Virus record (IMG/VR): IMGVR_UViG_3300042261_002385
Location: 372,001 to 436,000 of that record
Length of the DNA: 64,000 bases
Reading direction: 5' to 3' (one strand)
Both the position numbers and the translations under genes were made by a program. The notes below the pieces were generated by a model. It did no database searches, was not told where the DNA came from, and worked only from the letters and a program-made list of their open reading frames with translations. How positions within the stretch are numbered: position 1 is the first letter of the stretch; each line of letters opens with the position of its first letter. Below are positions 7,283 through 60,906 of the stretch, piece after piece.

Positions 7283-7888
7283 ATGAAATACTTAAAATTA
7301 TTTGAAGAATTCAAGATTGATTCAGAGCGAAGTTATAACATCGGGGATACTATTAGTGGTGTTCCAGGTAGCGATACATCTATAGTTGTTCGAATTGATG
7401 AAAGGGGAAAACCTATATCTGTTATGGCGAGATTGGATGTTCATCCTCTCTTTACTCAAAGAGATATAAAAGAACTTTATGATCTTTCTGATGCAAAGAG
7501 CATTGGTGAAATATTAAGGCTACCGGAAAATAAATTCTCAGGAAATTCCGGGTGGAGAATTCCTCTTTTGAGTGAGGTAGATATCATGAGAAAGATGTAT
7601 AAAGGTCAAATAAGTCAAAATTGGAACTTTACACGACTTGAAGAGCCTCTTTATCTATATTCTAATCATGAGTGTAGAGAATTTTGGGAAATGGATCCAA
7701 ATACTCGACTAACATATCAACTAAAAAATAAAGATAAACTAGGACTTTTAGATTTTGCAGGAGGTGGATTAGATAAATTAGGAACCATCACAAAGCAGTT
7801 TAATATTAGACTTGTATATGACCTTTATAATTATAAATATTCAGATACTCTGAAAGATTTTGTTAAAACACCAAGATTTGATAGTTAA
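7283..7888 (+). CDS. N-tagged hypothetical protein (MKYLKLFEE)
   Basis: ORF track; GWRIPLLSEV resembles the WRLPT motif of DUF1566-like domains. Confidence 0.65.
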   Translation: MKYLKLFEEFKIDSERSYNIGDTISGVPGSDTSIVVRIDERGKPISVMARLDVHPLFTQRDIKELYDLSDAKSIGEILRLPENKFSGNSGWRIPLLSEVDIMRKMYKGQISQNWNFTRLEEPLYLYSNHECREFWEMDPNTRLTYQLKNKDKLGLLDFAGGGLDKLGTITKQFNIRLVYDLYNYKYSDTLKDFVKTPRFDS

Positions 7889-8569: not shown

Positions 8570-9121
8570 ATGAAACACTTAAAATTATTTGAAGACTTCA
8601 ATGAGTATGATTTTGACGGTGCTAAAAACAATCCTGATAGAATTGTGGTCAAATTTGCGCCAGGTGGGTATAATAAATTTTGGGATCAATATGTAAAATC
8701 AACCGGTGATTATTATAGAGGATTAGGTGAGAATTGGACTTACTTTGGTAGTTGGGAAGACTTAGAAGAAAAATTTTCTAGTAAGGGATTAAAAATGAGA
8801 GATGGTGAATATTATCTTTTATATAAGAACTATGATCCAAAGGATATTAAAGATTGGTACTCTAAGGGGAAACCTGAAGGTAAATTAGCAGCGACATTCT
8901 ATTTTCTAAAATATAGCAAAGAAGCTGGAGAAATATACATAGTCTCTGTATATGGAACTGAATATCAATATGTAGAAGCGAACAAAGAATATACAACTGA
9001 TAAACTTGAAGGATATCCACAATCTACTTATTGTCGTTTTGATAAAGGTGATGTAGCTAGATTGGTTGAGGTAGGTTCTATCGATCATAGAGGTTATTTT
9101 GAGGTCGCATCAGTATCATAA
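8570..9121 (+). CDS. N-tagged hypothetical protein (MKHLKLFED)
   Basis: Leader plus first codons identical to the 6526 gene. Confidence 0.7.
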   Translation: MKHLKLFEDFNEYDFDGAKNNPDRIVVKFAPGGYNKFWDQYVKSTGDYYRGLGENWTYFGSWEDLEEKFSSKGLKMRDGEYYLLYKNYDPKDIKDWYSKGKPEGKLAATFYFLKYSKEAGEIYIVSVYGTEYQYVEANKEYTTDKLEGYPQSTYCRFDKGDVARLVEVGSIDHRGYFEVASVS

Positions 9122-14556: not shown

Positions 14557-14925
14557 ATGAAAAATTTAATTTTAACTTTTATCTTTAGTTTAATCTCATT
14601 GATTTCTTTCTCACAGTCACAAATTGACTTTGTTGAACTAACACACGATTTCGGTAGAATTGAGTTCAAAGGTGATACATTAGTGACTCAATTCTGGTTT
14701 AAAAATAGAGGAACTTCAACACTAGAAATAATTGACGCAAAAGGTTCTTGTGGTTGCACAATAGCTGATTTTCCAAAAGAAGTTCCAGTGGGGACCGGAG
14801 GTTCAATCACTGTTAAGTATTATAGTGCTAACGAAGGTTTCATAAACAAAAGTGTAACTGTCACTACAAACGATCCAAACAATCCAGTTGTAGTTTTGCG
14901 AATCAAAGGTGAAACCTATAAATAA
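14557..14925 (+). CDS. DUF1573 Ig-like secreted protein
   Basis: Signal peptide; HDFG..F.FKN.G..LEI..SCGCT..VTTNDP. Confidence 0.85.
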   Translation: MKNLILTFIFSLISLISFSQSQIDFVELTHDFGRIEFKGDTLVTQFWFKNRGTSTLEIIDAKGSCGCTIADFPKEVPVGTGGSITVKYYSANEGFINKSVTVTTNDPNNPVVVLRIKGETYK

Positions 14926-14931
14926 ATATAA

Positions 14932-16737
14932 ATGTCAAATTGGACTTTAATTAAAAGAATCTGGGAATTCGCTTACCCTTTTAGAAAAACTATTGGAGTA
15001 ATTTTCTTATGTATTCTTTTTACAGCCATCATTGATGGAATCAATACTTATTTTTTAAGTAATATTTTTGATATCATTCAGAAACACTCAAACGATCCAA
15101 ATTATATGAATGCAGCTCTTCTATCAGCTGCATTGGCTGGAATAGGAGTATTTGTAAGAATTCTTATTTCAAGATATCAAGGTAATCTTGAAATAAGAAA
15201 ACTTGATATAACTGCCTCAAACCATTTAAATCATTTTTCAATTGCAAAATATTTTGGATTTTCTAATGGTCAACACATCAATGAACACTCCGGAGTTAAA
15301 CAAAATATAATTACATCTGGTTTTCAATCAGTTCAAGGTCAAATTCAGCTTTTTGTTTATCACTTACTTCCAGCAGTTGCTAACTTTATAGTTTCAATTG
15401 TGATGTTGTTTTATATTAGCTCCTACATAGGATTCGCTTACTTAGGTGTGTCTTTTATTTTTCTTTGGTCGATATATAAGTTCAATACTTATCTTCAACC
15501 AAAATTGAGAGAAGTAAGAGACGCTAGAAATCAAACAGCTAGAACAATTTCTGAATTGTATCGATTTGTATTTTTAATTAAAAATGAAGTAGCTGAAAAG
15601 AAATCCTTAAATGATTTGGATGATGTTCAAGATGCGCATCAACAGGCCTATGAAAAGACTTGGCTACCTGGAAATAATTGGTTGACCATCATTCGATTAT
15701 CAACTGCTGGATTTAGATACTTAACCATACTTTTTGCAGTTTGGTTGTTATTTAATGGTTTTATAACTGCAGGTGCTATCTTCTTAATCTTTACCTGGTC
15801 TCAAAACTTCATAACGTCTCTTTGGATGATAACTGATATGCAAAAACAATTTATAACAGATAAAATTAACATTGAAAAGTATTTTGAAATTTTAGAAATC
15901 AAGCCTGACGTTCAAGAAGTTGAGACTCCAATAAGTTCAGATTTAATAGGAGATATTGAGTTTAGAAATGTCGAGTTCAGTTATCCACAAAGAAAAAAAT
16001 CACATAGTGATAAATTAGAAGATGAACTTCAATCAGAAATGGTTTTGAAAGGACTAACATTTACAATTAAAGAAGGTGAAAAAGTTGCCTTTGTCGGTGA
16101 AAGTGGTTCGGGTAAATCTACAATTGCGAATCTTGTAAGAAGAGCATTCGATCCACAAAATGGTGAAATTTTAGTAAATGGTAATAATCTTAAAGAATTA
16201 GAACTAAAATCATTTCTTAGAAAAATTGGAAGCGTAGACCAAGAGGTAAATCTCTTTGATAAGAGTATTCGAGAAAACATTTCTTATGGAACAGAAAGAC
16301 TACTAACCGATGAGGAGTTAAATAACATATCAAAGATGGCTCGTATTGATTCATTTTACAAAAAACTAGAACATGGTTGGGACACTATTGTTGGTGAACG
16401 TGGAGCTAAAGTATCAGGCGGTGAAAAACAAAGAATTGGTATCGCAAGAGCATTGGCTAAGAATCCAGAAATACTTATCTTTGATGAGGCGACTTCTGCA
16501 CTTGACACTGTAAGTGAAAGAGTGGTTCAAAAATCAATCGATGCTGTTAGTAAAGGAAAAACTTCTATAATCATCGCACACCGTCTTTCAACTGTAAAAA
16601 ACTGCGACAAGATATTTGTATTAAAACAGGGAGTATTATTAGCTGAAGGAACACATGAGCAACTTTTAGAAAGTTGCGAATATTATAAAGAATTAGTAAA
16701 ACATCAATTAACAAATAAACCAACAGAAAATGTATAA
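14932..16737 (+). CDS. ABC exporter half-transporter (TMD+NBD, MsbA-like)
   Basis: Hydrophobic N-half; GESGSGKST, VSGGEKQR, ILIFDEATSALD, IAHRLST. Confidence 0.93.
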   Translation: MSNWTLIKRIWEFAYPFRKTIGVIFLCILFTAIIDGINTYFLSNIFDIIQKHSNDPNYMNAALLSAALAGIGVFVRILISRYQGNLEIRKLDITASNHLNHFSIAKYFGFSNGQHINEHSGVKQNIITSGFQSVQGQIQLFVYHLLPAVANFIVSIVMLFYISSYIGFAYLGVSFIFLWSIYKFNTYLQPKLREVRDARNQTARTISELYRFVFLIKNEVAEKKSLNDLDDVQDAHQQAYEKTWLPGNNWLTIIRLSTAGFRYLTILFAVWLLFNGFITAGAIFLIFTWSQNFITSLWMITDMQKQFITDKINIEKYFEILEIKPDVQEVETPISSDLIGDIEFRNVEFSYPQRKKSHSDKLEDELQSEMVLKGLTFTIKEGEKVAFVGESGSGKSTIANLVRRAFDPQNGEILVNGNNLKELELKSFLRKIGSVDQEVNLFDKSIRENISYGTERLLTDEELNNISKMARIDSFYKKLEHGWDTIVGERGAKVSGGEKQRIGIARALAKNPEILIFDEATSALDTVSERVVQKSIDAVSKGKTSIIIAHRLSTVKNCDKIFVLKQGVLLAEGTHEQLLESCEYYKELVKHQLTNKPTENV

Positions 16738-33339: not shown

Positions 33340-33349
33340 AGATTATATA

Positions 33350-34075
33350 TTATTTATATAATGTAGTATCTATCGTTTGTAGAATAAAATCACACACCAA
33401 TATATGTCCTCGAGCAGTCGGATGTATTCCATCTGATGTCATACTTTGTAGATCATAAGGCTCAATAAATTGACATTCGGTTAAATCTGATTTTAATTTC
33501 AGCTGTAGGTTTTTTCTTTTTTCAACATATGGAATCCAATCTGACCTTTTACTTAATAGATTTGCTGGTCTTCCGACAGGAAGAATGTTAATATCCATAA
33601 ACTTACCTTCAATCTTCCAACCTAAGTTAACCCAAACATCACAACCATGTGAGTTGGATATGTCAATCATTTTCTGAAAATTAGAAATAGTTGTCTCCAA
33701 AGGTATTGACATATTTGAAGCATCATTTCCACCACCATATAAGATAACACGGTCCCAATTTTTACCAGTCTTAAACATCGATTCTAATTTTTCTAACATC
33801 CATTTTGAAGTCTTACCACCAGAAGCTCCAACATCAACAGTGACACCATATGGTGATAACTTTTGTGATAAGTGATTAGGCCAAGTCCAAGTTATCTTTT
33901 GTCCAGAATTAGTTGTAACAGCACTTTGTGAATCACCTATAATAAGAATAGACATCGGTGGTTTAATAGTATCAGTTACAACCTGACTGTTTGTTTTGAT
34001 AAAACTAATTTGTTTCTCATCTCTTAAAACTCCAGAAAACAAAAAAGATAAAATTAAAATTCCAAGCAATCTCAT
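33350..34075 (-). CDS. Secreted SGNH/GDSL hydrolase
   Basis: Signal peptide; IGDSQS, GGNDA, DGIHPT. Confidence 0.85.
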   Translation of the reverse strand: MRLLGILILSFLFSGVLRDEKQISFIKTNSQVVTDTIKPPMSILIIGDSQSAVTTNSGQKITWTWPNHLSQKLSPYGVTVDVGASGGKTSKWMLEKLESMFKTGKNWDRVILYGGGNDASNMSIPLETTISNFQKMIDISNSHGCDVWVNLGWKIEGKFMDINILPVGRPANLLSKRSDWIPYVEKRKNLQLKLKSDLTECQFIEPYDLQSMTSDGIHPTARGHILVCDFILQTIDTTLYK

Positions 34076-35471: not shown

Positions 35472-36344
35472 ATGAAACCACTACTTACTCTTATTGCTAT
35501 AATATTATACACAAATTTATTTTGTCAACAATCACAAGATACAGTAAGTCTTAGTCCACAACAATTATTCGAGTTTAACTCTAAATGGAATAACTTAGGT
35601 GTATCACAAATCTACGTAGATTTCTCTAAAGATGTGCTGTCAAACTCTGATTTATCATTCGGAGTAGTTGGTAGAAAAGTATCGACTACACTAAATCTAT
35701 CATATAATATACAATCTCCAAATGGCAACTGGAGTCATATGATACTTAGTTCGATAAATCCTGTTTGGAAATACTATGGTTTAGGCTACGGATTTTCACA
35801 TACTACCGATAAAAGAGTTACAACATTACAATCAATGATATCCTCTGATTTCAAGTTTCAAAACAATATTAATTTGAATTTTATAGATATTTACAAAACA
35901 AAAAAAATAGGTAAACTGGGATGGGGAATAACCTTGTCTAAAACATACTGGGATGAATGGCAAGGACCGTGGGAAGGCCAATATATTGTAGACTCATTAG
36001 GTAATTGGGTTAGTAATATTTATCCTATCAATCCACCATCTAATCAATTATCAACTCGAGCTATAATAATGTATACATATACATTTAAAACAAAAATTGT
36101 TGATATATCACCTCAAACATTCATTACATCGGATATTCATAAAGTATTTAAAAGTCCTGAATTGCAAATTAGTTACTTTGATGATGTAAACCTGGATATT
36201 TACTACGGTGTTTGCATGAATTGGAAAATAACCAACAAGTTTCGACTTAATACTACTTTAAGATTTAATAACACATATGATAAACAAAATTTAGGATTCA
36301 AAAAAAGTAATCCTATCCTTTTTATGATTGGAACAAGTTTTTAA
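35472..36344 (+). CDS. Putative outer-membrane beta-barrel protein
   Basis: Signal peptide, alternating beta pattern, terminal Phe (FMIGTSF). Confidence 0.5.
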   Translation: MKPLLTLIAIILYTNLFCQQSQDTVSLSPQQLFEFNSKWNNLGVSQIYVDFSKDVLSNSDLSFGVVGRKVSTTLNLSYNIQSPNGNWSHMILSSINPVWKYYGLGYGFSHTTDKRVTTLQSMISSDFKFQNNINLNFIDIYKTKKIGKLGWGITLSKTYWDEWQGPWEGQYIVDSLGNWVSNIYPINPPSNQLSTRAIIMYTYTFKTKIVDISPQTFITSDIHKVFKSPELQISYFDDVNLDIYYGVCMNWKITNKFRLNTTLRFNNTYDKQNLGFKKSNPILFMIGTSF

Positions 36345-36895: not shown

Positions 36896-36943
36896 AATTT
36901 TGAATTTATTATAGTTATATCGAAAAATAATATATAGTTTTAT

Positions 36944-40133: not shown

Positions 40134-40553
40134 ATGAAAAGAATTAAATCATTCATTTTGTTTGAGACATTTGATGAACAAGATGACGTCTATCAAATTA
40201 CCACTACTGTAAAAGAAATGTTATTAGAGTTAGACTTCTTAGATATTGAAAAAAGAGTTGATATTGTTAAAAATCATTCTAAATTACAAATTGATGAATC
40301 CCCTGAGATTATTGTAATTAATCTATGGAAGAAGGCAATTAAAAAAGAAGACTATGGATTTAGAGCTTCTTATCATTGGAATGATGTTAAAGATGTTATA
40401 GTGCCAGTTATTGATTATTTAGAAGCGGAAGGATTTACTTGGCAAATGGATAGGGGAACGCTTGCTTATAATGGAGTTCCTATTATATCTACATCAGGTA
40501 GTCAGCAATTCGATACTGTTAGGAGTAAAGTAGAAATGTGGTTTATAAGATGA
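40134..40553 (+). CDS. N-tagged paralog-family protein (MKRIKSFILFE)
   Basis: Close paralog of 51612. Confidence 0.72.
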   Translation: MKRIKSFILFETFDEQDDVYQITTTVKEMLLELDFLDIEKRVDIVKNHSKLQIDESPEIIVINLWKKAIKKEDYGFRASYHWNDVKDVIVPVIDYLEAEGFTWQMDRGTLAYNGVPIISTSGSQQFDTVRSKVEMWFIR

Positions 40554-40969
40554 GAAAGATTAAGTCATTTAAGTTATTTGAAAGTGATTATCTACCACTA
40601 AATTTTGATTATACACAGTATGATGAAGACCATAAATTCATTTCAGATACACTTTTAGATTTAGAAGACATAGGATATAAAATCAAAATCTCACCAGATG
40701 GAATTTCTAGTCATATAGGAATTAATGAAGAAATGCCATTCTTTATAATTGATAATAAAAAATACTTTAAATTTTCTGATGTTAAAGAACAACTTCTTCA
40801 AATTAAATCTTACTTAGATGATAGATGGTTTAAGTGTGGTGTTCTTTTTGAAGGTGATCCTAAAAGACTAGAAGTTTATATAGATGAAAAAGATTATGAC
40901 TATTTAGATGATTGGTTTCAAACATCAACTACAGCAATCGTAAATTTAGCAGTCTATTTTAATATATAG
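40550..40969 (+). CDS. N-tagged paralog-family protein (MRKIKSFKLFE)
   Basis: ISDTLLDLEDIG motif. Confidence 0.72.
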   Translation: MRKIKSFKLFESDYLPLNFDYTQYDEDHKFISDTLLDLEDIGYKIKISPDGISSHIGINEEMPFFIIDNKKYFKFSDVKEQLLQIKSYLDDRWFKCGVLFEGDPKRLEVYIDEKDYDYLDDWFQTSTTAIVNLAVYFNI

Positions 40970-51611: not shown

Positions 51612-52001
51612 GTGAAAAAGATTAAATCATTTAGTTTATTTGAGTCAGTTGATGATGCATTAGACATTTTACCTGTTGTAAAGGATATGTTATTAGAGTT
51701 AAGTGATTTAGATTATATTACTAATTGTGTAGTAAGAAGAATGGATGGTTGTGAGTATATTAGAATAGGAATTTCTAAGCCAGTTGTGATTGGAGATAGA
51801 TATGATGTTAAGGCATCATTCGAGTGGATTGATATAAAAGATATTATGGATACTATTATAGAGTATTTAAAATCCGAAGGGTATCATTATCAAGTGGATA
51901 AGGGAACCCTATCTTGGAGTGGTCATCCTATTGTGGTCACTTCTGGAAATGCCTTTGAAGGTATTAAATCAAGATGTGAAATGTGGTTTGAAAAGAGATG
52001 A
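51612..52001 (+). CDS. N-tagged paralog-family protein (MKKIKSFSLFES)
   Basis: AATATATA 51597; paralog of 40134. Confidence 0.72.
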   Translation: MKKIKSFSLFESVDDALDILPVVKDMLLELSDLDYITNCVVRRMDGCEYIRIGISKPVVIGDRYDVKASFEWIDIKDIMDTIIEYLKSEGYHYQVDKGTLSWSGHPIVVTSGNAFEGIKSRCEMWFEKR

Positions 52002-52513
52002 AGAGGTTAAAATCATTTAAGTTATTTAATGAATCAAAAGATTATAATTTATCTACTATAAAGGATATGTTATTAGATTTTACTGATAAGGATATTGATG
52101 TTGATGTCAGTGAAGGTTCTTGGATTTTAGATAATGGGGAAGTTGAATATGTTAAGATAAAGATTGGAAAATTTAATGGACCTCTTTTTAGTATAGAAAG
52201 GTGTTTATTAGATGTTATAGATTATTTAGAAGAATCTGGGTTTGTTATGATGGATGAGTCTTGGTATTGGAATGATTCTTGGCAGCATTACGTTGGGTGT
52301 CCTAATTGTTTATCAGATGATTTTGAGGACAATTATGGTTTACGTGGAGCAACTCGTTGTAATAAGTGTGAGTATATCGGGCCTCCTGATAGTTTTTTAC
52401 AAGACCAGTGGTCAGTTACAAGATATGATTTGGCAAAGGATATTAAGGGTAGGCAGGTTGAACAAATAGAGTTACTTTTCAGTGATAGAAGGAGTAAGTT
52501 CGGTGGTGGGTAA
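51998..52513 (+). CDS. N-tagged paralog-family protein with inserted Zn ribbon
   Basis: MKRLKSFKLFNE; IKDMLLDFTD; CPNC..CNKC. Confidence 0.7.
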   Translation: MKRLKSFKLFNESKDYNLSTIKDMLLDFTDKDIDVDVSEGSWILDNGEVEYVKIKIGKFNGPLFSIERCLLDVIDYLEESGFVMMDESWYWNDSWQHYVGCPNCLSDDFEDNYGLRGATRCNKCEYIGPPDSFLQDQWSVTRYDLAKDIKGRQVEQIELLFSDRRSKFGGG

Positions 52514-52743: not shown

Positions 52744-53013
52744 TTAGAATGCTGGAACGGTGTCTTTAATTACTTTATCGTATTTATGATCAATTAAGAT
52801 AAAAGGAGCTGGAATTACCACTTGAGATCCGTCAGAGTTTCGGTAAGTGGCATAGTTTTCACCCAATTCGATAGAATCAGTGAACCAGATGGCTTTATGT
52901 TTTTCGCCTTTGTAGTGGACGTATCCTTTAATTTCATAACGCCAGGTGGTTTCTTTTTTGGATTGTTGACAACTTAAAATAAGTAACGTGGTTAAGATAA
53001 TTAGGTATTTCAT
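52744..53013 (-). CDS. Putative lipoprotein
   Basis: MKYLIILTTLLILSC lipobox. Confidence 0.65.
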   Translation of the reverse strand: MKYLIILTTLLILSCQQSKKETTWRYEIKGYVHYKGEKHKAIWFTDSIELGENYATYRNSDGSQVVIPAPFILIDHKYDKVIKDTVPAF

Positions 53014-53054: not shown

Positions 53055-53807
53055 TTATATGATATTAAACCAACAGTATTGTTTATGCCAGTTTTGGGTA
53101 TGATTAAAGAAGTAACTTCCTGTTCTAGAGTTATCAATAAGTATTAGACCAGGTTGGTCTTGGTTATTTCCTCTACAAACTATAATTTTATCATCATCTA
53201 TTAATTCACTGAAATAGGTTTGTATTCCATTAAATTGATTTAGGGCATGATTTATATAAGGAGATGATTTTTTTCCATATATGATAGATGTAGCGGGTCC
53301 AATTCTTCCTTCCATACTAATTATACTTGAGCACATTTGTATCTTTGTAATTATTCTTCGATAATCTTGGTCAAAATCTCCGGTTAGTTTGACATCTAGT
53401 GATGACATTGGTCCATATGCAATTGATTTAGGAAGTTTAGTATTTTGGTTTAAGAAATCAATTACTTCATCTTTGAGTTTTTGGTAAGTCTCAAATTTTT
53501 TAGAAGTCAGTGTAAGTTTCATAATTTTTGGACTTATCACTTGATTTCCTGAACTACTTACTATTGAGTTATATTGTGAGCTTAAATCAACTGCTATTGA
53601 TGAAGTATTATTTTCTCTAAAATTGTTTAGTTCTTCAATCTTATCATCTAAAACAGCATCAACTACTAATTCTCTGTTTCGTTGTTTAATCTGTCTTTGA
53701 TATTCTTCTTCATCTTGTGATACCATATCAATATACATCAATTGAGCCGTTGGGTGACTCATTTGTTTATCTGAGTAGTTACAAATAGATTTAAGTTCGT
53801 CAATCAT
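53055..53807 (-). CDS. Hypothetical protein with an internal C-tag-like helix (NRELVVDAVL)
   Basis: ORF track. Confidence 0.65.
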   Translation of the reverse strand: MIDELKSICNYSDKQMSHPTAQLMYIDMVSQDEEEYQRQIKQRNRELVVDAVLDDKIEELNNFRENNTSSIAVDLSSQYNSIVSSSGNQVISPKIMKLTLTSKKFETYQKLKDEVIDFLNQNTKLPKSIAYGPMSSLDVKLTGDFDQDYRRIITKIQMCSSIISMEGRIGPATSIIYGKKSSPYINHALNQFNGIQTYFSELIDDDKIIVCRGNNQDQPGLILIDNSRTGSYFFNHTQNWHKQYCWFNII

Positions 53808-53809
53808 AA

Positions 53810-56260
53810 TTATCTTAATAATCTCACGCTACCCTGAAGTTCTCTTTTATCATCGTTTTTTGGAAGACCAAACTCGATAGTCCAGTTATAGATTCCATCA
53901 GGACAGATTTTATTATTATAAGTTCCATCCCATTTACCAGTAACATCAAAAGATTCCCATACCATTTCTCCCCATCTATTATACATAGTCATATGAAACT
54001 GATAGATATCAACTCCTGAAGTAATAATTGGAGAAAAGTATTGATTGTGTTCGTCTCCGTCTGGAGTAAATGAATTTGGAATATAAATTAATTCTTGTGG
54101 ACAAAGTTGAATAGTAACTGTTATATTTTGTGGATAAGATTGGCAGCCTAATTCCCAGCGAGTTGCTTGAAATAAAAACACACCTTCTTGATTCCAAGTT
54201 AAGTTAATTTGGTCTCCGATTAAGGTATCTCCAAAAGTTGACCATTCTGTATAACCTGGTTGTGAAAAAAGTGATACATAGGTATCAGTAATTGAGTCTC
54301 CTTCACATAGTTCGTGATACTCAGAATTAGTGATTTGACCATCAATTTGTATTGAGAATTGTGGACGTGGATTTACTTCAATTTGAGATGTTTGTGTAAA
54401 TTGACACCCTGATTGAATATAAGTATACGTTATGGTGTTTAGACCTGCTAATTGTGTTGTTGGACAGAACTGAGAATTTTGAACACCAACTCCTGAGAAT
54501 TGACCACCTACTGGTTGTGCAGATAATTGGACACAGTTATCATAGTCACAAAGTGGAAGAACTGGTGTGATTTGTGGAACGATATCTAAATCTACAATAG
54601 TAAATGTTTGTGGAGGTGAAAGACATCCAGTTACATCTTCTCCTATAACAGTTAAGGCATTTGGGTAAACACCACCAGCGACTCCTGTCACATCGAGTAA
54701 GATGTTTTGGGTTCCTTGACCAGAGATTGTTCCGATTGTTGAGGTCCAGTTATAGGTTAAGTTATTAAAAAGACTTGATGTTTGATAAGGGTTATTTGAA
54801 GAGTTAACACAAACTGTATCACTTCCTATTATTGGGTTTATTATAACTTGTGGTGGATCTGTTAAGGTAACGGTTCCAGTTGCTTGGCATCCATTAGCAT
54901 CGGTTACTACAACACTAAAGTTTCCTTGGCAAAGACCAGTTGCAGTTTGTCCAGTTTGATTATCAGACCAAAGATAAGTGTAGGGTGCAATACCTGCTAC
55001 TGGATTTACCACGGCTTGTCCATCACAGTAACTGTAGCAAAGTGGATTAGTTCCTGTAACTGGTGGTTGTGGAAGTGCTGCTGGTTCAACAATAGTGGCC
55101 AATCCTTGATAGCTACAACCAGATGCGTCCTGGAGTGTGAAGTTATAGTTTCCAGCACAAAGACCATTTTGTGTTAGTGAGTTTCCGACTAAACCAGGCC
55201 AACTTATAGTTATTGGAGCAGTTCCACCTATTGGAGTTACAATTATCTGACAAGTGCAATCACCATTACAAAGTGGATTCGTTATTTGAACTCCTGGAGG
55301 TGGTAGATTCGGGGTTGGAGTCACTAAAATAGTGTCTGGTCCTAAGTTTCCAGCTCCAGCATTACATTGAGACCAGCCTAGATTACAAGTTGGATAAACA
55401 AATTGACAAGTGTATTGAGTTGGTCCATTTGGAGTTACCGTGATTTGAGGTCCGGTTCCGATTGGAATTGGATTTCCAACTTGAAACCAAGTTAATGTAG
55501 GTGTCACTTGTGGACCTGATGGTGTCCATCTGTAAGCGTTGTTCTGAGTTGTCCACTGAGTTGAGTTTCTACCTGGAACAGTCACGGCTGCGGATCCTAA
55601 AAGGTTATGAACACCTTGAACTGCGGTTCCGCCAGCCCATTGTGGACAGTTTGGTTTATTTTGAATATGATTTTCGATTACGTTTGTAGATTCGTAAATT
55701 ACAATATGGAAAGTTCCTAATAGGTTAGTGCAAGAAAACATAGGAACGTTTATCCAACTAACAATTAATCTACGACATGGAGCTACGCCTTGAACTTGAT
55801 AACGGACTAAACCTCCGATACCTGGATTCCAGTCTTGCCACGGTCCCATAATACAATTCTTAGGTGTTAAGGCGTTTCCTGTTGGAATTGGATTTGATGT
55901 AAAAGTTGTTGGTTGACCAGCGCTAAATGAAATCCAACCGTTTGAACCTATCCAGAATTGTGTATACGTGTTTCCATAGTAACAGAAAGTAAAACCAATG
56001 TTAAATGGTCCAGATTGAGAGTCATCTCCTAAAGCAACAGTAGTTCCGGCATTGGGTTGACCGACAAATGGTATGTTAGTAACGGTATAGTTTGTGGTTT
56101 GATTTGGATTAGAACCAGGTCCACACTGAGAAAGGTCAGCTGTTAAAGTAGTTTGTGTTACTCCACAAGGTAGAGTTACATCTGGTCCTAAATAAGGACA
56201 ATATTGACCAAATGTGAATTGGGCAAAGATAAGGCTTAAAAAAATTATTAGGTTTCTCAT
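53810..56260 (-). CDS. SprB-repeat surface protein with T9SS type-B (gliding-motility-associated) C-terminal domain
   Basis: Signal peptide; PLC..GGTAP..GLCAG..DANGC repeats; YIPNSFTPDGD..YNRWGEMV..WDGTY..DGIY..GSVRLLR. Confidence 0.88.
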   Translation of the reverse strand: MRNLIIFLSLIFAQFTFGQYCPYLGPDVTLPCGVTQTTLTADLSQCGPGSNPNQTTNYTVTNIPFVGQPNAGTTVALGDDSQSGPFNIGFTFCYYGNTYTQFWIGSNGWISFSAGQPTTFTSNPIPTGNALTPKNCIMGPWQDWNPGIGGLVRYQVQGVAPCRRLIVSWINVPMFSCTNLLGTFHIVIYESTNVIENHIQNKPNCPQWAGGTAVQGVHNLLGSAAVTVPGRNSTQWTTQNNAYRWTPSGPQVTPTLTWFQVGNPIPIGTGPQITVTPNGPTQYTCQFVYPTCNLGWSQCNAGAGNLGPDTILVTPTPNLPPPGVQITNPLCNGDCTCQIIVTPIGGTAPITISWPGLVGNSLTQNGLCAGNYNFTLQDASGCSYQGLATIVEPAALPQPPVTGTNPLCYSYCDGQAVVNPVAGIAPYTYLWSDNQTGQTATGLCQGNFSVVVTDANGCQATGTVTLTDPPQVIINPIIGSDTVCVNSSNNPYQTSSLFNNLTYNWTSTIGTISGQGTQNILLDVTGVAGGVYPNALTVIGEDVTGCLSPPQTFTIVDLDIVPQITPVLPLCDYDNCVQLSAQPVGGQFSGVGVQNSQFCPTTQLAGLNTITYTYIQSGCQFTQTSQIEVNPRPQFSIQIDGQITNSEYHELCEGDSITDTYVSLFSQPGYTEWSTFGDTLIGDQINLTWNQEGVFLFQATRWELGCQSYPQNITVTIQLCPQELIYIPNSFTPDGDEHNQYFSPIITSGVDIYQFHMTMYNRWGEMVWESFDVTGKWDGTYNNKICPDGIYNWTIEFGLPKNDDKRELQGSVRLLR

Positions 56261-56442
56261 AAATTATGATATGGTTTTTTTTAAAAAAAGTTTATTACGG
56301 TATATATTGATAAGTTGTTTGTGAATTATCGTAAATAGATAAAAGATTAGCAAACTTATTAACTGGATTAGCAACCAAAATATTTGATAATTTAGATAAA
56401 TTCCTTATCTTTGTATTATAAATCACTACAAAAACAACACTT

Positions 56443-59256: not shown

Positions 59257-60906
59257 TTAAATTTTAGTTACGAGATTTTCTACAATTTGGAGACCTCTTA
59301 TTATTTTTGAATAATAATCATTTACTCTCCAATTTCTCAAATATTGACAAGCTCTTTCACCAGTATCTTGACCTAAATAATCTATGAAATTTGATAAATT
59401 ATCTAAACCGTAAGTGCTATTAGAAAAGAAGTTTGATAGACTTATCATTTTTTGACGAGCTATTTCTAAATCTTCTATGGTATTAAATTCACCAGACATT
59501 AGTCTTGTATAGAACTTTTGACTTATTCTTTCTAAACTTTCAACAATTGGTAAATATTTGTTTTCAGTTTCTTCACTGTCGGATTTTAGAATTTTTTTAA
59601 CAGTTTCTAAATTTTTAGTGATTCTAGTAGTTCTTTCAGCTGCTCTTTTGTAAAGGTCTTTGATTCTATTATTAATTTGATTAATGCAGTATTCTTTATT
59701 ACTTTCGTCTTCAGTAGACATCATATCATAATAAAGTTCTGATATTGATCCAAAATAGTTTTGATATCTTGAAGCTGATTCTAAGACAAACATTGACCAT
59801 CTACCACCAACTCCTCTAGATACTAAATTTTTGATATTAGACACATCGCCTATGATGTCAGCTTTAAGTGCAATTTGAGTAAGATATCTTTCAATATTTT
59901 GTTTTCTAACATCATCATCACTAACTACTAATCTGCTGCCAGATTTAAGTTCTTCTCTTTCATCTTTTATTTCACTTCTACGTTGATACTCACCCGACTT
60001 TAATTTATTTAAGTCTAACACTAAGGCAAAATGAGCATCTTTTATAGTAGATTCTACATTTGTTCCAGTATATGATTTAAAGTATTGGTTTAGTCCAACA
60101 TTCCACTCGTAAGGATCTACGGCATCTTTATCATCATCATCATCACCTTCTTCTTTTTCTTTAAGAACACAAATTCTGTTAAAATCTCCACCAGATACAT
60201 TCCAAGAGTATCTTCCATAACTTCTCCAAGCACTACCATTTGGTGATCCACCGTCGAACCTGTCTTGAATACAGAATACTTCTCCACCACTTTGAAAAAT
60301 CGTTGCAATTACATCTGGATCTCTATCATGTGCTGCAATTGTAACTTTTGTCAAGTGTGGTAGACTACGGAGAGTTCTTACTCCATTTGAATCAGGTAAC
60401 AGGGTAGATACTACTTTATATTTTTGCAAAGATTTTGATTTAGATGCTACGCTTCTAAGAACTCCATCAACTCCAGTTTGTGTGATGAATTTACCATCTG
60501 ATGAAAACCAGAATTTAATTATTTTTACCTCTGGTTGTTGTGGTTCTTTTCCAGATCCATCACAATGGGGACAATCAACGATTCTAGTTCTTTGACCCCA
60601 CATACGTGCTAATTTACCTGATTTACAAACCTCACCTTCAACACCGTGTTGTCTGAATGCGGTTTTAGAAGTCATTTTACAAGGTTCATCTTTAGGTTCA
60701 AATTTAACATTTAGTGCCTTTTTGAAAGGTAAGTATTCAAACATATCATCTGAAAACTGAGATAGTGGAAAATCGTAACTGCGAGCTAATTTTTCGAGTG
60801 TATTAATGAATCTTTGTTTAGATTCAGAATTTATATATCCTAAAATTTTAGTTAATTTAACTGATTCAAATGCTTCGAAAAGTTTGAGATATTTTAATTG
60901 TCTCAT
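59257..60906 (-). CDS. Large N-tagged hypothetical protein (MRQLKYLKLFEAFE)
   Basis: Zn-ribbon-like CPHCDGSG; helical C-half. Confidence 0.75.
   Translation of the reverse strand: MRQLKYLKLFEAFESVKLTKILGYINSESKQRFINTLEKLARSYDFPLSQFSDDMFEYLPFKKALNVKFEPKDEPCKMTSKTAFRQHGVEGEVCKSGKLARMWGQRTRIVDCPHCDGSGKEPQQPEVKIIKFWFSSDGKFITQTGVDGVLRSVASKSKSLQKYKVVSTLLPDSNGVRTLRSLPHLTKVTIAAHDRDPDVIATIFQSGGEVFCIQDRFDGGSPNGSAWRSYGRYSWNVSGGDFNRICVLKEKEEGDDDDDKDAVDPYEWNVGLNQYFKSYTGTNVESTIKDAHFALVLDLNKLKSGEYQRRSEIKDEREELKSGSRLVVSDDDVRKQNIERYLTQIALKADIIGDVSNIKNLVSRGVGGRWSMFVLESASRYQNYFGSISELYYDMMSTEDESNKEYCINQINNRIKDLYKRAAERTTRITKNLETVKKILKSDSEETENKYLPIVESLERISQKFYTRLMSGEFNTIEDLEIARQKMISLSNFFSNSTYGLDNLSNFIDYLGQDTGERACQYLRNWRVNDYYSKIIRGLQIVENLVTKI

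What the first reader, a model, noticed from the sequence alone, without database searches (positions are those of the whole stretch)
53810..56260. Phage-encoded T9SS type-B substrate (SprB-like adhesin)
Seen: signal peptide, SprB-like Cys/Gly repeats and a complete gliding-motility-type CTD, with an AATATATA element upstream. Established: type-B CTDs direct export through the Bacteroidota T9SS and usually need a PorP/SprF-like partner; SprB is implicated in phage susceptibility in Flavobacterium johnsoniae. Inference: the phage remodels the infected cell surface (adhesion, receptor masking or superinfection exclusion) through the host T9SS.
Basis: partly seen in the sequence, partly recalled or inferred. 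Interest (0 to 1): 0.68.

Follow-up and report, generated by a model that had tools for sequence, protein, structure and literature searches.

The report
Jumbo-phage gene for T9SS-exported surface protein
A giant freshwater phage carries a well-conserved, host-derived gene for a surface protein with the export tag of the Bacteroidota type IX secretion system but no gene for the carrier protein such tags need, so the phage probably uses the infected cell's own secretion machinery to change the cell surface.

Summary
Window 53810-56260 (-) is an intact 816-aa ORF with a signal peptide, two SprB repeats, PKD-like domains and a full type-B T9SS C-terminal domain (CTD), all above curated cut-offs. 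It lies on a real myovirus-type jumbo phage: a 436 kb IMG/VR record cut from a 522 kb contig, with tail sheath, portal, major head and protease genes.

It is not a chimera. The same protein with the same flanks occurs in independent assemblies, and its GC3 equals the phage mean. Full-length homologs sit on 28 viral contigs, two of them complete with terminal repeats, and evolve under purifying selection (dN/dS 0.09-0.24, CTD included).

New findings:
- The best-conserved part is a ~230-aa NIDO-like N-domain shared with hundreds of Bacteroidota proteins.
- In a quick tree the phage clade nests among Flavobacteriales/Crocinitomicaceae sequences.
- One full-length ortholog is chromosomal, next to rpoA/rplQ/eno in a Crocinitomicaceae MAG.
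- None of six phages tested has a PorP/SprF shuttle gene; candidate host MAGs have 10-22. The protein is therefore an orphan type-B cargo that must use a host shuttle.

It is not an SprB ortholog. Its biological role is inferred, not shown. Phage-borne type-A T9SS cargo was already published, so this is a new variant of a known kind.

The parts
53810..56260 (-). Whole gene (816 codons plus stop) for the phage-encoded T9SS type-B cargo protein
   Evidence: The identical protein is found in four assemblies.
56207..56260 (-). Sec signal peptide, residues 1-18, predicted cleavage FTFG|Q with Gln at +1
   Evidence: Read from the sequence. AF2 gives a helix at residues 2-15. All phage homologs keep '...Y(S/G)Q|YCP'.
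55511..56206 (-). Conserved all-beta N-terminal domain (residues 19-250), NIDO-like, with invariant motifs such as NCIMGPWQDW
   Evidence: It is the best-conserved region: 72-83% identity among phage copies and 77% to the chromosomal ortholog. It has no Pfam hit of its own. NIDO PF06119 hits 10 of 32 relatives, best E 2.6e-4. AF2 pTM is 0.67. No solved-structure match was found.
55343..55510 (-). Small Ig-like beta domain plus Pro-rich linker (residues 251-306)
   Evidence: AF2 strands at 255-288, low pLDDT at 291-306.
54857..55342 (-). Two Cys/Gly-rich SprB-type repeats (residues 307-468)
   Evidence: PF13573, two stretches, 30.6 bits. AF2 pLDDT is about 80-89.
54101..54856 (-). Three PKD/Ig-like beta domains (residues 469-720)
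   Evidence: PF19408 PKD_6 at 474-530. AF2 pLDDT is about 88-92 over residues 470-720.
53813..54100 (-). Type-B T9SS C-terminal sorting domain (residues 721-816)
   Evidence: PF13585 52.1 bits; TIGR04131 36.5 bits. Many residues are invariant across 24 homologs. dN/dS is 0.07-0.19 in informative phage pairs.
56296..56319 (-). Upstream conserved block AACAACTTA-N-AATATATA-CCGTA, including the AATATATA element at 56301-56308
   Evidence: The block recurs upstream of divergent phage homologs (L008, L011, L013, L016). A (T/A)ATATATA element also precedes the tail sheath, major head, protease, portal and virion-structural genes.

Best explanation
The gene is a host-derived, phage-maintained 'orphan' type-B cargo of the Bacteroidota type IX secretion system.

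Proposed mechanism:
1. In the infected cell (probably a Crocinitomicaceae or other Flavobacteriales bacterium) the protein is made from a phage promoter element that it shares with the structural genes.
2. It crosses the inner membrane through Sec by its signal peptide.
3. Its type-B CTD is recognised by the host T9SS translocon.
4. A host PorP/SprF-like shuttle collects it, because the phage encodes none.
5. That shuttle holds it on the outer surface, with the NIDO-like N-domain held away from the cell on a stalk of SprB and PKD/Ig domains.

A host ortholog exists with the same architecture and a 54% identical CTD. The phage copy therefore most likely uses the same host shuttle and adds to or replaces the host's own protein. 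The effect would be to remodel the infected cell's surface for the phage's benefit. My preferred reading is masking or replacing a T9SS-displayed receptor, so that competing or progeny phages do not adsorb to the infected cell or its debris.

Shown: domain content, phage location, conservation, purifying selection, host-family origin, and the lack of a phage shuttle.
Inferred: export, anchoring, timing and biological effect.
For: - Domains are above curated cut-offs.
- The genome is a bona fide jumbo myovirus.
- The identical gene with identical flanks occurs in a 522-kb JGI contig and in a Logan assembly. A 98% copy with the same downstream genes occurs in another sample.
- GC3 is 0.213 against a genome mean of 0.207; the raised GC comes from codon positions 1 and 2.
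- 28 viral contigs hold full-length homologs at 44-68% identity. They include the complete, terminal-repeat-bounded genomes G003 and G005.
- More than 120 protein clusters of about 815 aa exist.
- dN/dS is 0.09-0.24 overall and 0.07-0.19 in the CTD for informative pairs.
- PorP/SprF is absent from G000 and from five other phages carrying the gene. The same search finds 21, 10 and 22 copies in three Bacteroidota MAGs.
- The phage clade (SH-aLRT 98) nests among Flavobacteriales/Crocinitomicaceae sequences.
- Chromosomal ortholog L035 lies next to eno, carA, rplQ and rpoA. It is similar in every domain, CTD 54%. Its composition is native to its contig. It is itself an orphan, with no PorP/SprF-like ORF in the ~1.6 kb immediately upstream and none among its Pfam-scanned neighbours; the PorP genes found on its contig lie more than 60 kb away.
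- Literature: orphan type-B cargo uses a shared orphan shuttle, and CTDs of high identity cross-talk (PMC12618676). Type-B cargo stays bound to PorP-like proteins (PMC9143113). T9SS-displayed adhesins are thought to be phage receptors (PMC9804748).
- The (T/A)ATATATA element is shared with structural genes.
Against: - There is no expression, secretion or localisation data.
- The host is inferred only from gene phylogeny, T9SS dependence and Gln+1 signal peptides.
- The N-domain has no assigned activity or ligand, and no solved structural relative.
- The AATATATA element lies 40 nt from the ATG, whereas most copies lie 0-25 nt away. Shared timing with late genes is therefore uncertain.
- The direction of transfer between the phage clade and L035 is unresolved, and only a quick tree was obtained.
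- The specific benefit (receptor masking) has no direct support here.
Confidence: 0.5

Rival explanations
1. Host-function maintenance or adhesion gene. The phage copy simply supplies more of the host's own NIDO-type surface adhesin during a long jumbo-phage infection. This keeps the infected cell attached to particles, algae or neighbouring cells (future hosts), and has no role in blocking phages.
For: - A full-length chromosomal ortholog has the same architecture.
- The adhesin-like stalk of SprB and PKD/Ig domains is modelled with pLDDT about 80-92.
- NIDO-like domains are extracellular interaction modules in other proteins (established knowledge; the match is sub-threshold).
- The phage carries other secreted proteins: an Ig_7-rich 1,729-aa protein, DUF1573, an SGNH hydrolase and an EEP nuclease.
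Against: - The phage and host copies are only 37-77% identical by domain, more diverged than expected for simple resupply.
- No ligand is known.
Confidence: 0.25
2. Secreted enzyme or soluble binding protein. The conserved N-domain is catalytic or carbohydrate-binding, and the protein acts on extracellular polymers (capsule, algal glycans) after T9SS export, either released or surface-bound.
For: - The N-domain has many invariant polar and aromatic residues (D79, D80, D143, E190, R163, R231, several Trp).
- The weak best structural matches are N-terminal beta-supersandwich domains of glycoside phosphorylases, mutarotases and polysaccharide lyases, Z 4-5.
- Published phage T9SS cargo includes glycoside hydrolases (PMC7468147).
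Against: - Z of 5 or less is within the noise range stated by the tool.
- There is no Pfam or PDB sequence match to any enzyme.
- Type-B cargo is normally retained on its shuttle (PMC9143113).
Confidence: 0.12
3. Virion protein. It would be an Ig/PKD-rich decoration or fibre protein of the phage particle, and the CTD and signal peptide would be relics.
For: - Ig-like and PKD domains are common on phage virions (established knowledge; Fraser et al. 2006, cited in PMC6949934).
- The upstream element is shared with structural genes.
Against: - The signal peptide and CTD are intact and under purifying selection in all phage copies, which would send the protein out of the cytoplasm where virions assemble.
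- The gene is not in the structural module.
- Its neighbours are not syntenic between phages.
Confidence: 0.05
4. Artefact or passenger. The gene is host DNA mis-joined to, or mis-binned with, the phage contig, or it is a recently captured gene with no function for the phage.
For: - IMG/VR classes the record as 'provirus'.
- GC of the 54-56 kb window bin is 0.39 against about 0.30 around it.
- Close relatives are found in Bacteroidota MAGs.
Against: - The trimmed 'host' part is the first ~86 kb of the 522-kb contig, at the opposite end from this gene.
- Independent assemblies reproduce both junctions.
- GC3 equals the phage mean.
- 28 viral contigs hold the gene, including terminal-repeat-bounded complete genomes.
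- dN/dS is about 0.1-0.2.
Confidence: 0.03

Closest known systems
Orphan type-B CTD substrates of Flavobacterium johnsoniae (Fjoh_1123, Fjoh_1720, Fjoh_4934) served by the orphan shuttle Fjoh_1677 (Paillat et al. 2025, PMC12618676)
   Same: It has a Sec signal peptide, a putative adhesin body and a TIGR04131-type CTD. No porP/sprF-like gene lies next to it, so it must be collected by a shuttle encoded elsewhere.
   Different: The gene sits on a phage, so the shuttle is in another genome (the host's). The N-terminal module is NIDO-like. Secretion has not been tested.
SprB, the gliding-motility adhesin of F. johnsoniae, with its shuttle SprF (PMC9143113)
   Same: It has SprB-type Cys/Gly repeats (PF13573) and a type-B CTD, and belongs to the class of T9SS surface proteins thought to serve as phage receptors (PMC9804748).
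   Different: It is 816 aa with two repeats, whereas SprB is a multi-thousand-residue repeat protein (size from established knowledge). There is no sprF or sprC/sprD context. The N-domain is unrelated. It is not an ortholog.
Phage-encoded T9SS cargo in 'Cryophage' (Bellas et al. 2020, PMC7468147) and in gut phages with BACON repeats (de Jonge et al. 2019, PMC6949934)
   Same: These are phage genes with T9SS sorting domains, presumed to hijack the host T9SS.
   Different: Those are described as type-A sorting domains, which PorV serves generically, on enzymes and PA14 proteins that vary between phage variants. This one is type-B, which needs a specific shuttle. It is conserved under purifying selection across a wide phage clade and has a chromosomal ortholog.
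Chromosomal NIDO-like/CHU_C proteins of Bacteroidota MAGs (L035, 816 aa, Crocinitomicaceae; the ~1,040-aa class in Bacteroidia/Sphingobacteriaceae chromosomes)
   Same: They share the N-domain at 49-77% identity and carry a CHU_C tail. L035 shares the whole architecture.
   Different: Most cellular members have different middle regions and CTDs (only 30-35% identity in the CTD for L036, L041 and L039). None has a known function.

Membership tests
T9SS type-B CTD cargo (TIGR04131 / PF13585) | C-terminal domain matches the type-B model above its curated cut-off, at full length and at the very C-terminus | tested here: met
   PF13585: 52.1 bits (cut-off 27), profile positions 2-84 of 86, residues 726-812. 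TIGR04131: 36.5 bits (cut-off 35), residues 726-814 of 816.
T9SS type-B CTD cargo (TIGR04131 / PF13585) | N-terminal Sec signal peptide | tested here: met
   Basic residue, then a hydrophobic stretch, then FG|Q. AF2 gives a helix at residues 2-15. The feature is conserved in all phage homologs. No SignalP-type predictor was available.
T9SS type-B CTD cargo (TIGR04131 / PF13585) | Cognate PorP/SprF-like shuttle gene directly downstream (usual, but not universal: 9 of 12 in F. johnsoniae, PMC12618676) | tested here: not met
   PF11751 is absent from G000 and from five other phages. The positive control found 10-22 copies per MAG. The gene therefore falls in the 'orphan' subclass.
T9SS type-B CTD cargo (TIGR04131 / PF13585) | Secretion depends on the T9SS and on a PorP/SprF shuttle | not testable with these tools
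   This needs secretion assays. The one complex-prediction job gave no answer and is not evidence either way.
SprB gliding adhesin | Very large protein made mostly of SprB repeats, encoded with sprF (and sprC/sprD) | tested here: not met
   The protein is 816 aa with two PF13573 stretches at 30.6 bits. No PorP/SprF gene is in the genome. Neighbouring genes have no matches of this kind.
NIDO (nidogen-like) domain, PF06119 | Sequence match to the Pfam model | tested here: inconclusive
   The window protein has no hit. Ten of 32 family members hit at E <= 1, best 2.6e-4. An atlas feature neighbour is a 92% NIDO cluster at score 0.86.
Phage-encoded T9SS cargo as published (Cryophage, type-A CTD) | Type-A sorting domain (PF18962 / TIGR04183) on a phage gene | tested here: not met
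   This protein carries a type-B CTD, not type-A. A different G000 gene (C1:55533-60722) has only a sub-threshold type-A match: 24.7 bits in the genome search and 17.5 bits in the protein scan, cut-off 27.
Tailed jumbo phage (the context of the claim) | Virion hallmark genes on the same record | tested here: met
   Tail sheath E 9e-95, portal 2.4e-60, head maturation protease 1.9e-30, major head protein 8e-25. CheckV completeness is 95%.

The most novel reading that the evidence does not exclude
A broad clade of freshwater Bacteroidota phages, from about 150 kb to over 500 kb, keeps a type-B T9SS cargo whose CTD has evolved to dock on a particular host PorP/SprF shuttle. The phage protein would displace the host's own ortholog, which is the phage's receptor or part of the receptor complex. 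That would make it a secretion-system-dependent superinfection-exclusion or progeny-protection device, a new class of phage-host surface conflict that works through shuttle competition.
Probability: 0.15. Interest if true: 0.8.

Novelty: new variant of a known kind. Interest (0 to 1): 0.5.

Why it matters
T9SS-displayed proteins are the main surface interface of many environmental and pathogenic Bacteroidota and are thought to include phage receptors. A phage gene that must pass through the host T9SS and borrow a specific host shuttle would show that phages rewrite this surface from inside the cell. It also offers a natural probe of type-B CTD/shuttle specificity, which is currently an open question (PMC12618676).

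The gene also links this jumbo-phage clade to Crocinitomicaceae/Flavobacteriales hosts. And it flags a large uncharacterised NIDO-like surface-protein family in Bacteroidota.

Tried and rejected
Independent assemblies served instead.

2. Hidden phage-encoded shuttle: the 290-aa virus-only protein at window 35472-36344 looks like an outer-membrane barrel by atlas features. It has no Pfam or NCBIfam hit and no close relatives in viral contigs by pattern search. It is absent from five other phages that carry the adhesin gene. I rejected it as an obligate partner.

3. Complex prediction with the CTD (residues 720-816) and three orphan PorP/SprF proteins of the candidate host MAG: verdict 'no answer', score 0.01. 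This is no evidence for or against binding.

4. Fold assignment of the N-domain: no PDB sequence hit, no Foldseek match at E <= 0.001, and best VIA-align Z of 5.0, which is within noise.

5. Synteny: the window's flanking genes are not found next to the homologs in other phages, so gene neighbourhood gives no functional clue.

6. Terminase_6C (PF17289) found nothing in G000. Hallmark genes were shown with PHROGs instead.

7. The careful maximum-likelihood tree did not finish in two 300-s runs. Only the quick tree with SH-aLRT support is used.

8. PorP/SprF next to the chromosomal ortholog: none within the locus.

9. The large representative-protein search was not used, because the word search and the family scans answered the question. 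Only table 11 was used.
Full report
OBSERVATION. Window 53810-56260 on the minus strand is an uninterrupted 816-codon ORF. Pfam finds a full-length CHU_C type IX secretion signal domain at residues 726-812 (52.1 bits, cut-off 27). It also finds two SprB repeats (30.6 bits, cut-off 28) and a PKD_6 domain (25.2 bits, cut-off 25). NCBIfam finds TIGR04131, the type-B sorting domain, at 36.5 bits against a cut-off of 35. The N-terminus (MRNLIIFLSLIFAQFTFG|QYCP) reads as a Sec signal peptide. AF2 models residues 2-15 as a helix, and every phage homolog keeps the same layout with Gln at +1. From memory, a Gln at +1 fits the Bacteroidota 'Q-rule' for signal peptidase I substrates. One AATATATA copy lies at 56301-56308 (-), 40 nt upstream of the ATG.

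IS IT ON A PHAGE, AND IS THE ASSEMBLY SOUND? The window is positions 372001-436000 of a 436,265-bp IMG/VR record rated 95% complete by CheckV. The record encodes a tail sheath (E 9e-95), portal (2.4e-60), head maturation protease, major head protein, a tape-measure-like protein and a tail fibre. Virion-structural PHROG matches also lie inside the window.

The 'provirus' label comes from trimming. The exact protein sits on a 522,324-bp JGI contig, and by my coordinate arithmetic the IMG/VR record is that contig without its first ~86 kb, which is the end far from this gene. The same protein with the same neighbours on both sides is also on an independent Logan assembly. A 98%-identical copy from a different JGI sample has the same downstream genes.

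The locally raised GC (0.39 against about 0.30) is an amino-acid effect. GC3 is 0.213 against a genome mean of 0.207, while GC1 and GC2 are at the 93rd percentile, as expected for a protein rich in Thr, Gly, Pro, Asn and Gln. I consider a chimera excluded.

CONSERVATION IN PHAGES. Twenty-eight IMG/VR contigs encode homologs at 44-68% identity, nearly all full-length. Flanking genes are not shared with the window. These contigs do share other G000 genes located elsewhere, so they are related phages with shuffled gene order. Five of their records were searched whole. All five carry the CHU_C gene, and two are complete genomes of 158 and 166 kb bounded by terminal repeats. The gene is therefore not restricted to the largest genomes.

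The word-based protein search lists more than 120 clusters of about 815 aa at 50-98% identity, on contigs of up to 296 kb. In GenBank phages only two records match, both uncultured phages of over 630 kb. Pairwise dN/dS among phage copies is 0.09-0.24 over the gene and 0.07-0.19 in the CTD for informative pairs. The export signal is therefore under selection in phages.

WHAT THE PROTEIN IS MADE OF. The full-length AF2 model is beads on a string (mean pLDDT 73, pTM 0.34). In order:
- signal helix
- all-beta N-domain, about residues 19-250
- small Ig-like domain and Pro-rich linker, to residue 306
- two SprB-type domains, to residue 468
- three PKD/Ig-like domains, to residue 720 (pLDDT about 90)
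- linker and CTD

The N-domain is the best-conserved part, at 72-83% identity among phages, and has no Pfam match of its own. It has no solved-structure relative by sequence, Foldseek or exhaustive structural alignment (best Z 5.0, within noise). Scanning 32 diverse family members one by one gave NIDO (PF06119) in 10 of them, best E 2.6e-4. That agrees with an atlas feature neighbour. I call the domain NIDO-like, with membership inconclusive. The same predicted fold recurs in atlas clusters that are 100% viral with CHU_C/PKD_6/SprB, and in Bacteroidota CHU_C proteins.

ORIGIN AND HOST. A scan of one genome per prokaryotic species with the N-domain profile found at least 268 relatives. Of the 80 best loci kept, 78 are from Bacteroidota MAGs and two are from MAGs labelled Akkermansia. 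Several lie on contigs of 0.9-1.7 Mb that must be chromosomes.

In a quick ML tree of the N-domain, 29 viral rows and two MAG rows form a clade with SH-aLRT 98. The neighbouring lineages are Flavobacteriales and Crocinitomicaceae, and the ~1,040-aa class of Bacteroidia/Sphingobacteriaceae lies further out. The careful search did not finish.

One MAG row inside the viral clade, L035 (Crocinitomicaceae), is an 816-aa protein next to enolase, carA, rplQ and rpoA, so it is chromosomal. It resembles the window protein in every domain as much as other phage copies do: N-domain 77%, SprB 47%, PKD 49%, CTD 54%. The other Flavobacteriales copies share only the N-domain. Its GC3 (0.37) matches its neighbours, and the phage copies match their own genomes. 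The transfer is therefore old, and its direction is open. These data, the T9SS dependence and the Gln+1 signal peptides of many G000 secreted proteins point to a Flavobacteriales host, probably Crocinitomicaceae. This is inference.

THE MISSING PARTNER. Type-B CTDs are collected from the translocon and held at the surface by cognate PorP/SprF-like outer-membrane proteins, usually encoded directly downstream. Three orphan substrates in F. johnsoniae share one orphan shuttle, and CTDs of high identity cross-talk (PMC12618676, PMC9143113).

PF11751 is absent from G000 and from five other phages with the gene. The same search finds 21, 10 and 22 copies in three MAGs that hold cellular homologs. 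In the Crocinitomicaceae MAG, 13 PorP/SprF genes lie directly downstream of a type-B CTD gene, and five loci (one with a tandem pair) plus a partial one at a contig end have no such gene beside them and look like orphans. The chromosomal ortholog L035 is itself an orphan substrate. The phage protein is thus an orphan cargo that must borrow a host shuttle, plausibly the one that serves the host ortholog.

A candidate phage barrel (window 35472-36344) was considered as a substitute shuttle and rejected as an obligate partner. The one complex-prediction job returned no answer and is not used as evidence.

REGULATORY HINT. AATATATA is enriched 2.7-fold in the window. It sits within 60 nt upstream of 129 of 504 crudely called genes in the genome. 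A (T/A)ATATATA element precedes the tail sheath, major head, protease, portal and two virion-structural genes, and also this gene. It does not precede the other secreted-protein cluster or the AAA, ABC-transporter and nuclease genes. It is a plausible structural/late promoter element. Here it lies further from the ATG than usual, inside a block (AACAACTTA...CGTA) that is conserved upstream of divergent homologs. Timing remains an inference.

MECHANISM AND RIVALS. The best-supported reading is export by Sec and the host T9SS, followed by capture and surface retention by a host PorP/SprF-like shuttle. The NIDO-like head would be displayed on an Ig/SprB stalk, adding to or displacing the host's ortholog.

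The benefit I favour is receptor masking or exclusion of other phages. T9SS-displayed adhesins are thought to be flavobacterial phage receptors, and T9SS loss gives broad phage resistance (PMC9804748).

Rivals, detailed in the Rival explanations section, are:
- plain adhesion or maintenance of a host function
- a secreted enzyme or binding protein
- a virion protein
- an artefact or functionless passenger gene

COMPARISON AND NOVELTY. The protein meets the sequence definition of a type-B T9SS cargo. It is not an SprB ortholog: two repeats, 816 aa, no sprF. Phage-borne T9SS cargo has been published for type-A sorting domains in 'Cryophage', where it was called a unique occurrence in 2020 (PMC7468147). 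T9SS sorting-domain proteins were also noted in gut phages (PMC6949934). My searches found no paper describing type-B cargo on phages, this family, or its NIDO-like domain. JGI merely labels members 'gliding motility-associated-like protein'. I rate it a new variant of a known kind, of moderate interest. The idea of hijacking the T9SS is not new. The new points are the dependence on a specific host shuttle, the strong conservation across a wide phage clade and the chromosomal ortholog, and these make the idea testable.

LIMITS. There are no expression, secretion or host-linkage data. Only a quick tree was obtained. The signal peptide was judged by eye. The N-domain model has moderate confidence (pLDDT 66, pTM 0.67).

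Noticed in passing
window 7283-7888(+), 8570-9121(+), 40550-40969(+), 51998-52513(+), 59257-60906(-); also G000:C1 4957, 48929, 66867, 77294, 157350 and others: At least 14 of 504 crudely called genes, from 93 to 549 aa long, begin with nearly the same N-terminus 'MK(Y/H)LK(L/S)FE'. The pattern was found 0 times in two control windows inside proteins. The tag ends in L-x-E. From memory, that recalls T4-type prohead-protease sites and the capsid-targeting sequences of internal head proteins. It may mark a set of packaged proteins.
   Followed up: partly
whole window (36 copies), e.g. 33344-33351(-), 36929-36936(+), 56301-56308(-): AATATATA, or (T/A)ATATATA, is a genome-wide upstream element. 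129 of 504 genes have it within 60 nt of the start, with distance modes at 0-10 and 15-25 nt. It precedes the structural genes and is a candidate late-promoter motif of this phage.
   Followed up: partly
window 35472-36344 (+): A 290-aa protein with a signal peptide (Gln at +1) and a C-terminal Phe. It belongs to atlas clusters that are 100% viral, and its nearest named neighbours are all outer-membrane beta-barrels (autotransporter, porin, OmpG). It has no Pfam or NCBIfam hit and is absent from five related phages. It may be a phage-encoded outer-membrane barrel.
   Followed up: partly
G000:C1:55533-62934 (outside the window; locus L115): A second cluster of secreted proteins, each with its own signal peptide. 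It holds a 1,729-aa protein with seven Ig_7 domains and a sub-threshold type-A CTD, a 349-aa ALK/LTK glycine-rich-domain protein, a 188-aa PKD_6 protein and a 189-aa protein with a full type-B CTD (47 bits on TIGR04131). A secreted EEP-family nuclease lies at 67426-68160.
   Followed up: partly
window 52744-53013 (-) and 53055-53807 (-): Directly downstream on the same strand lie a 250-aa protein with no signal peptide and no database match, which starts 2 nt after the adhesin's stop codon, and an 89-aa protein with a lipoprotein-type signal (LILSC). Both are kept in the 98%-identical contig from another sample but not in more distant phages. They may form an operon with the adhesin gene.
   Followed up: no
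window 14557-16737 (+): A secreted DUF1573/Ig-like protein (122 aa) is followed by a 601-aa ABC-transporter homolog (phrog_2392, E 1e-124). This is an unusual cargo for a phage.
   Followed up: no
G000 as a whole; JGI contig of 522,324 bp: The IMG/VR 'provirus' record is a 522-kb contig with its first ~86 kb removed. For a jumbo phage rich in cell-like genes, this trimming may be an artefact, and the true genome may exceed 500 kb. G000 also has a GC peak (0.44) at 290-300 kb over a 3,055-aa ORF.
   Followed up: no
L063 (Crocinitomicaceae MAG contig, 127.5 kb) and L034 (viral contig): A truncated 442-aa form of the protein pairs with a viral copy at 100% branch support. The pair sits on a long shared stem (length 1.43) and both rows have an amino-acid make-up unlike the rest of the alignment. 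It is either a phage contig binned into a MAG or a second phage-host exchange.
   Followed up: no
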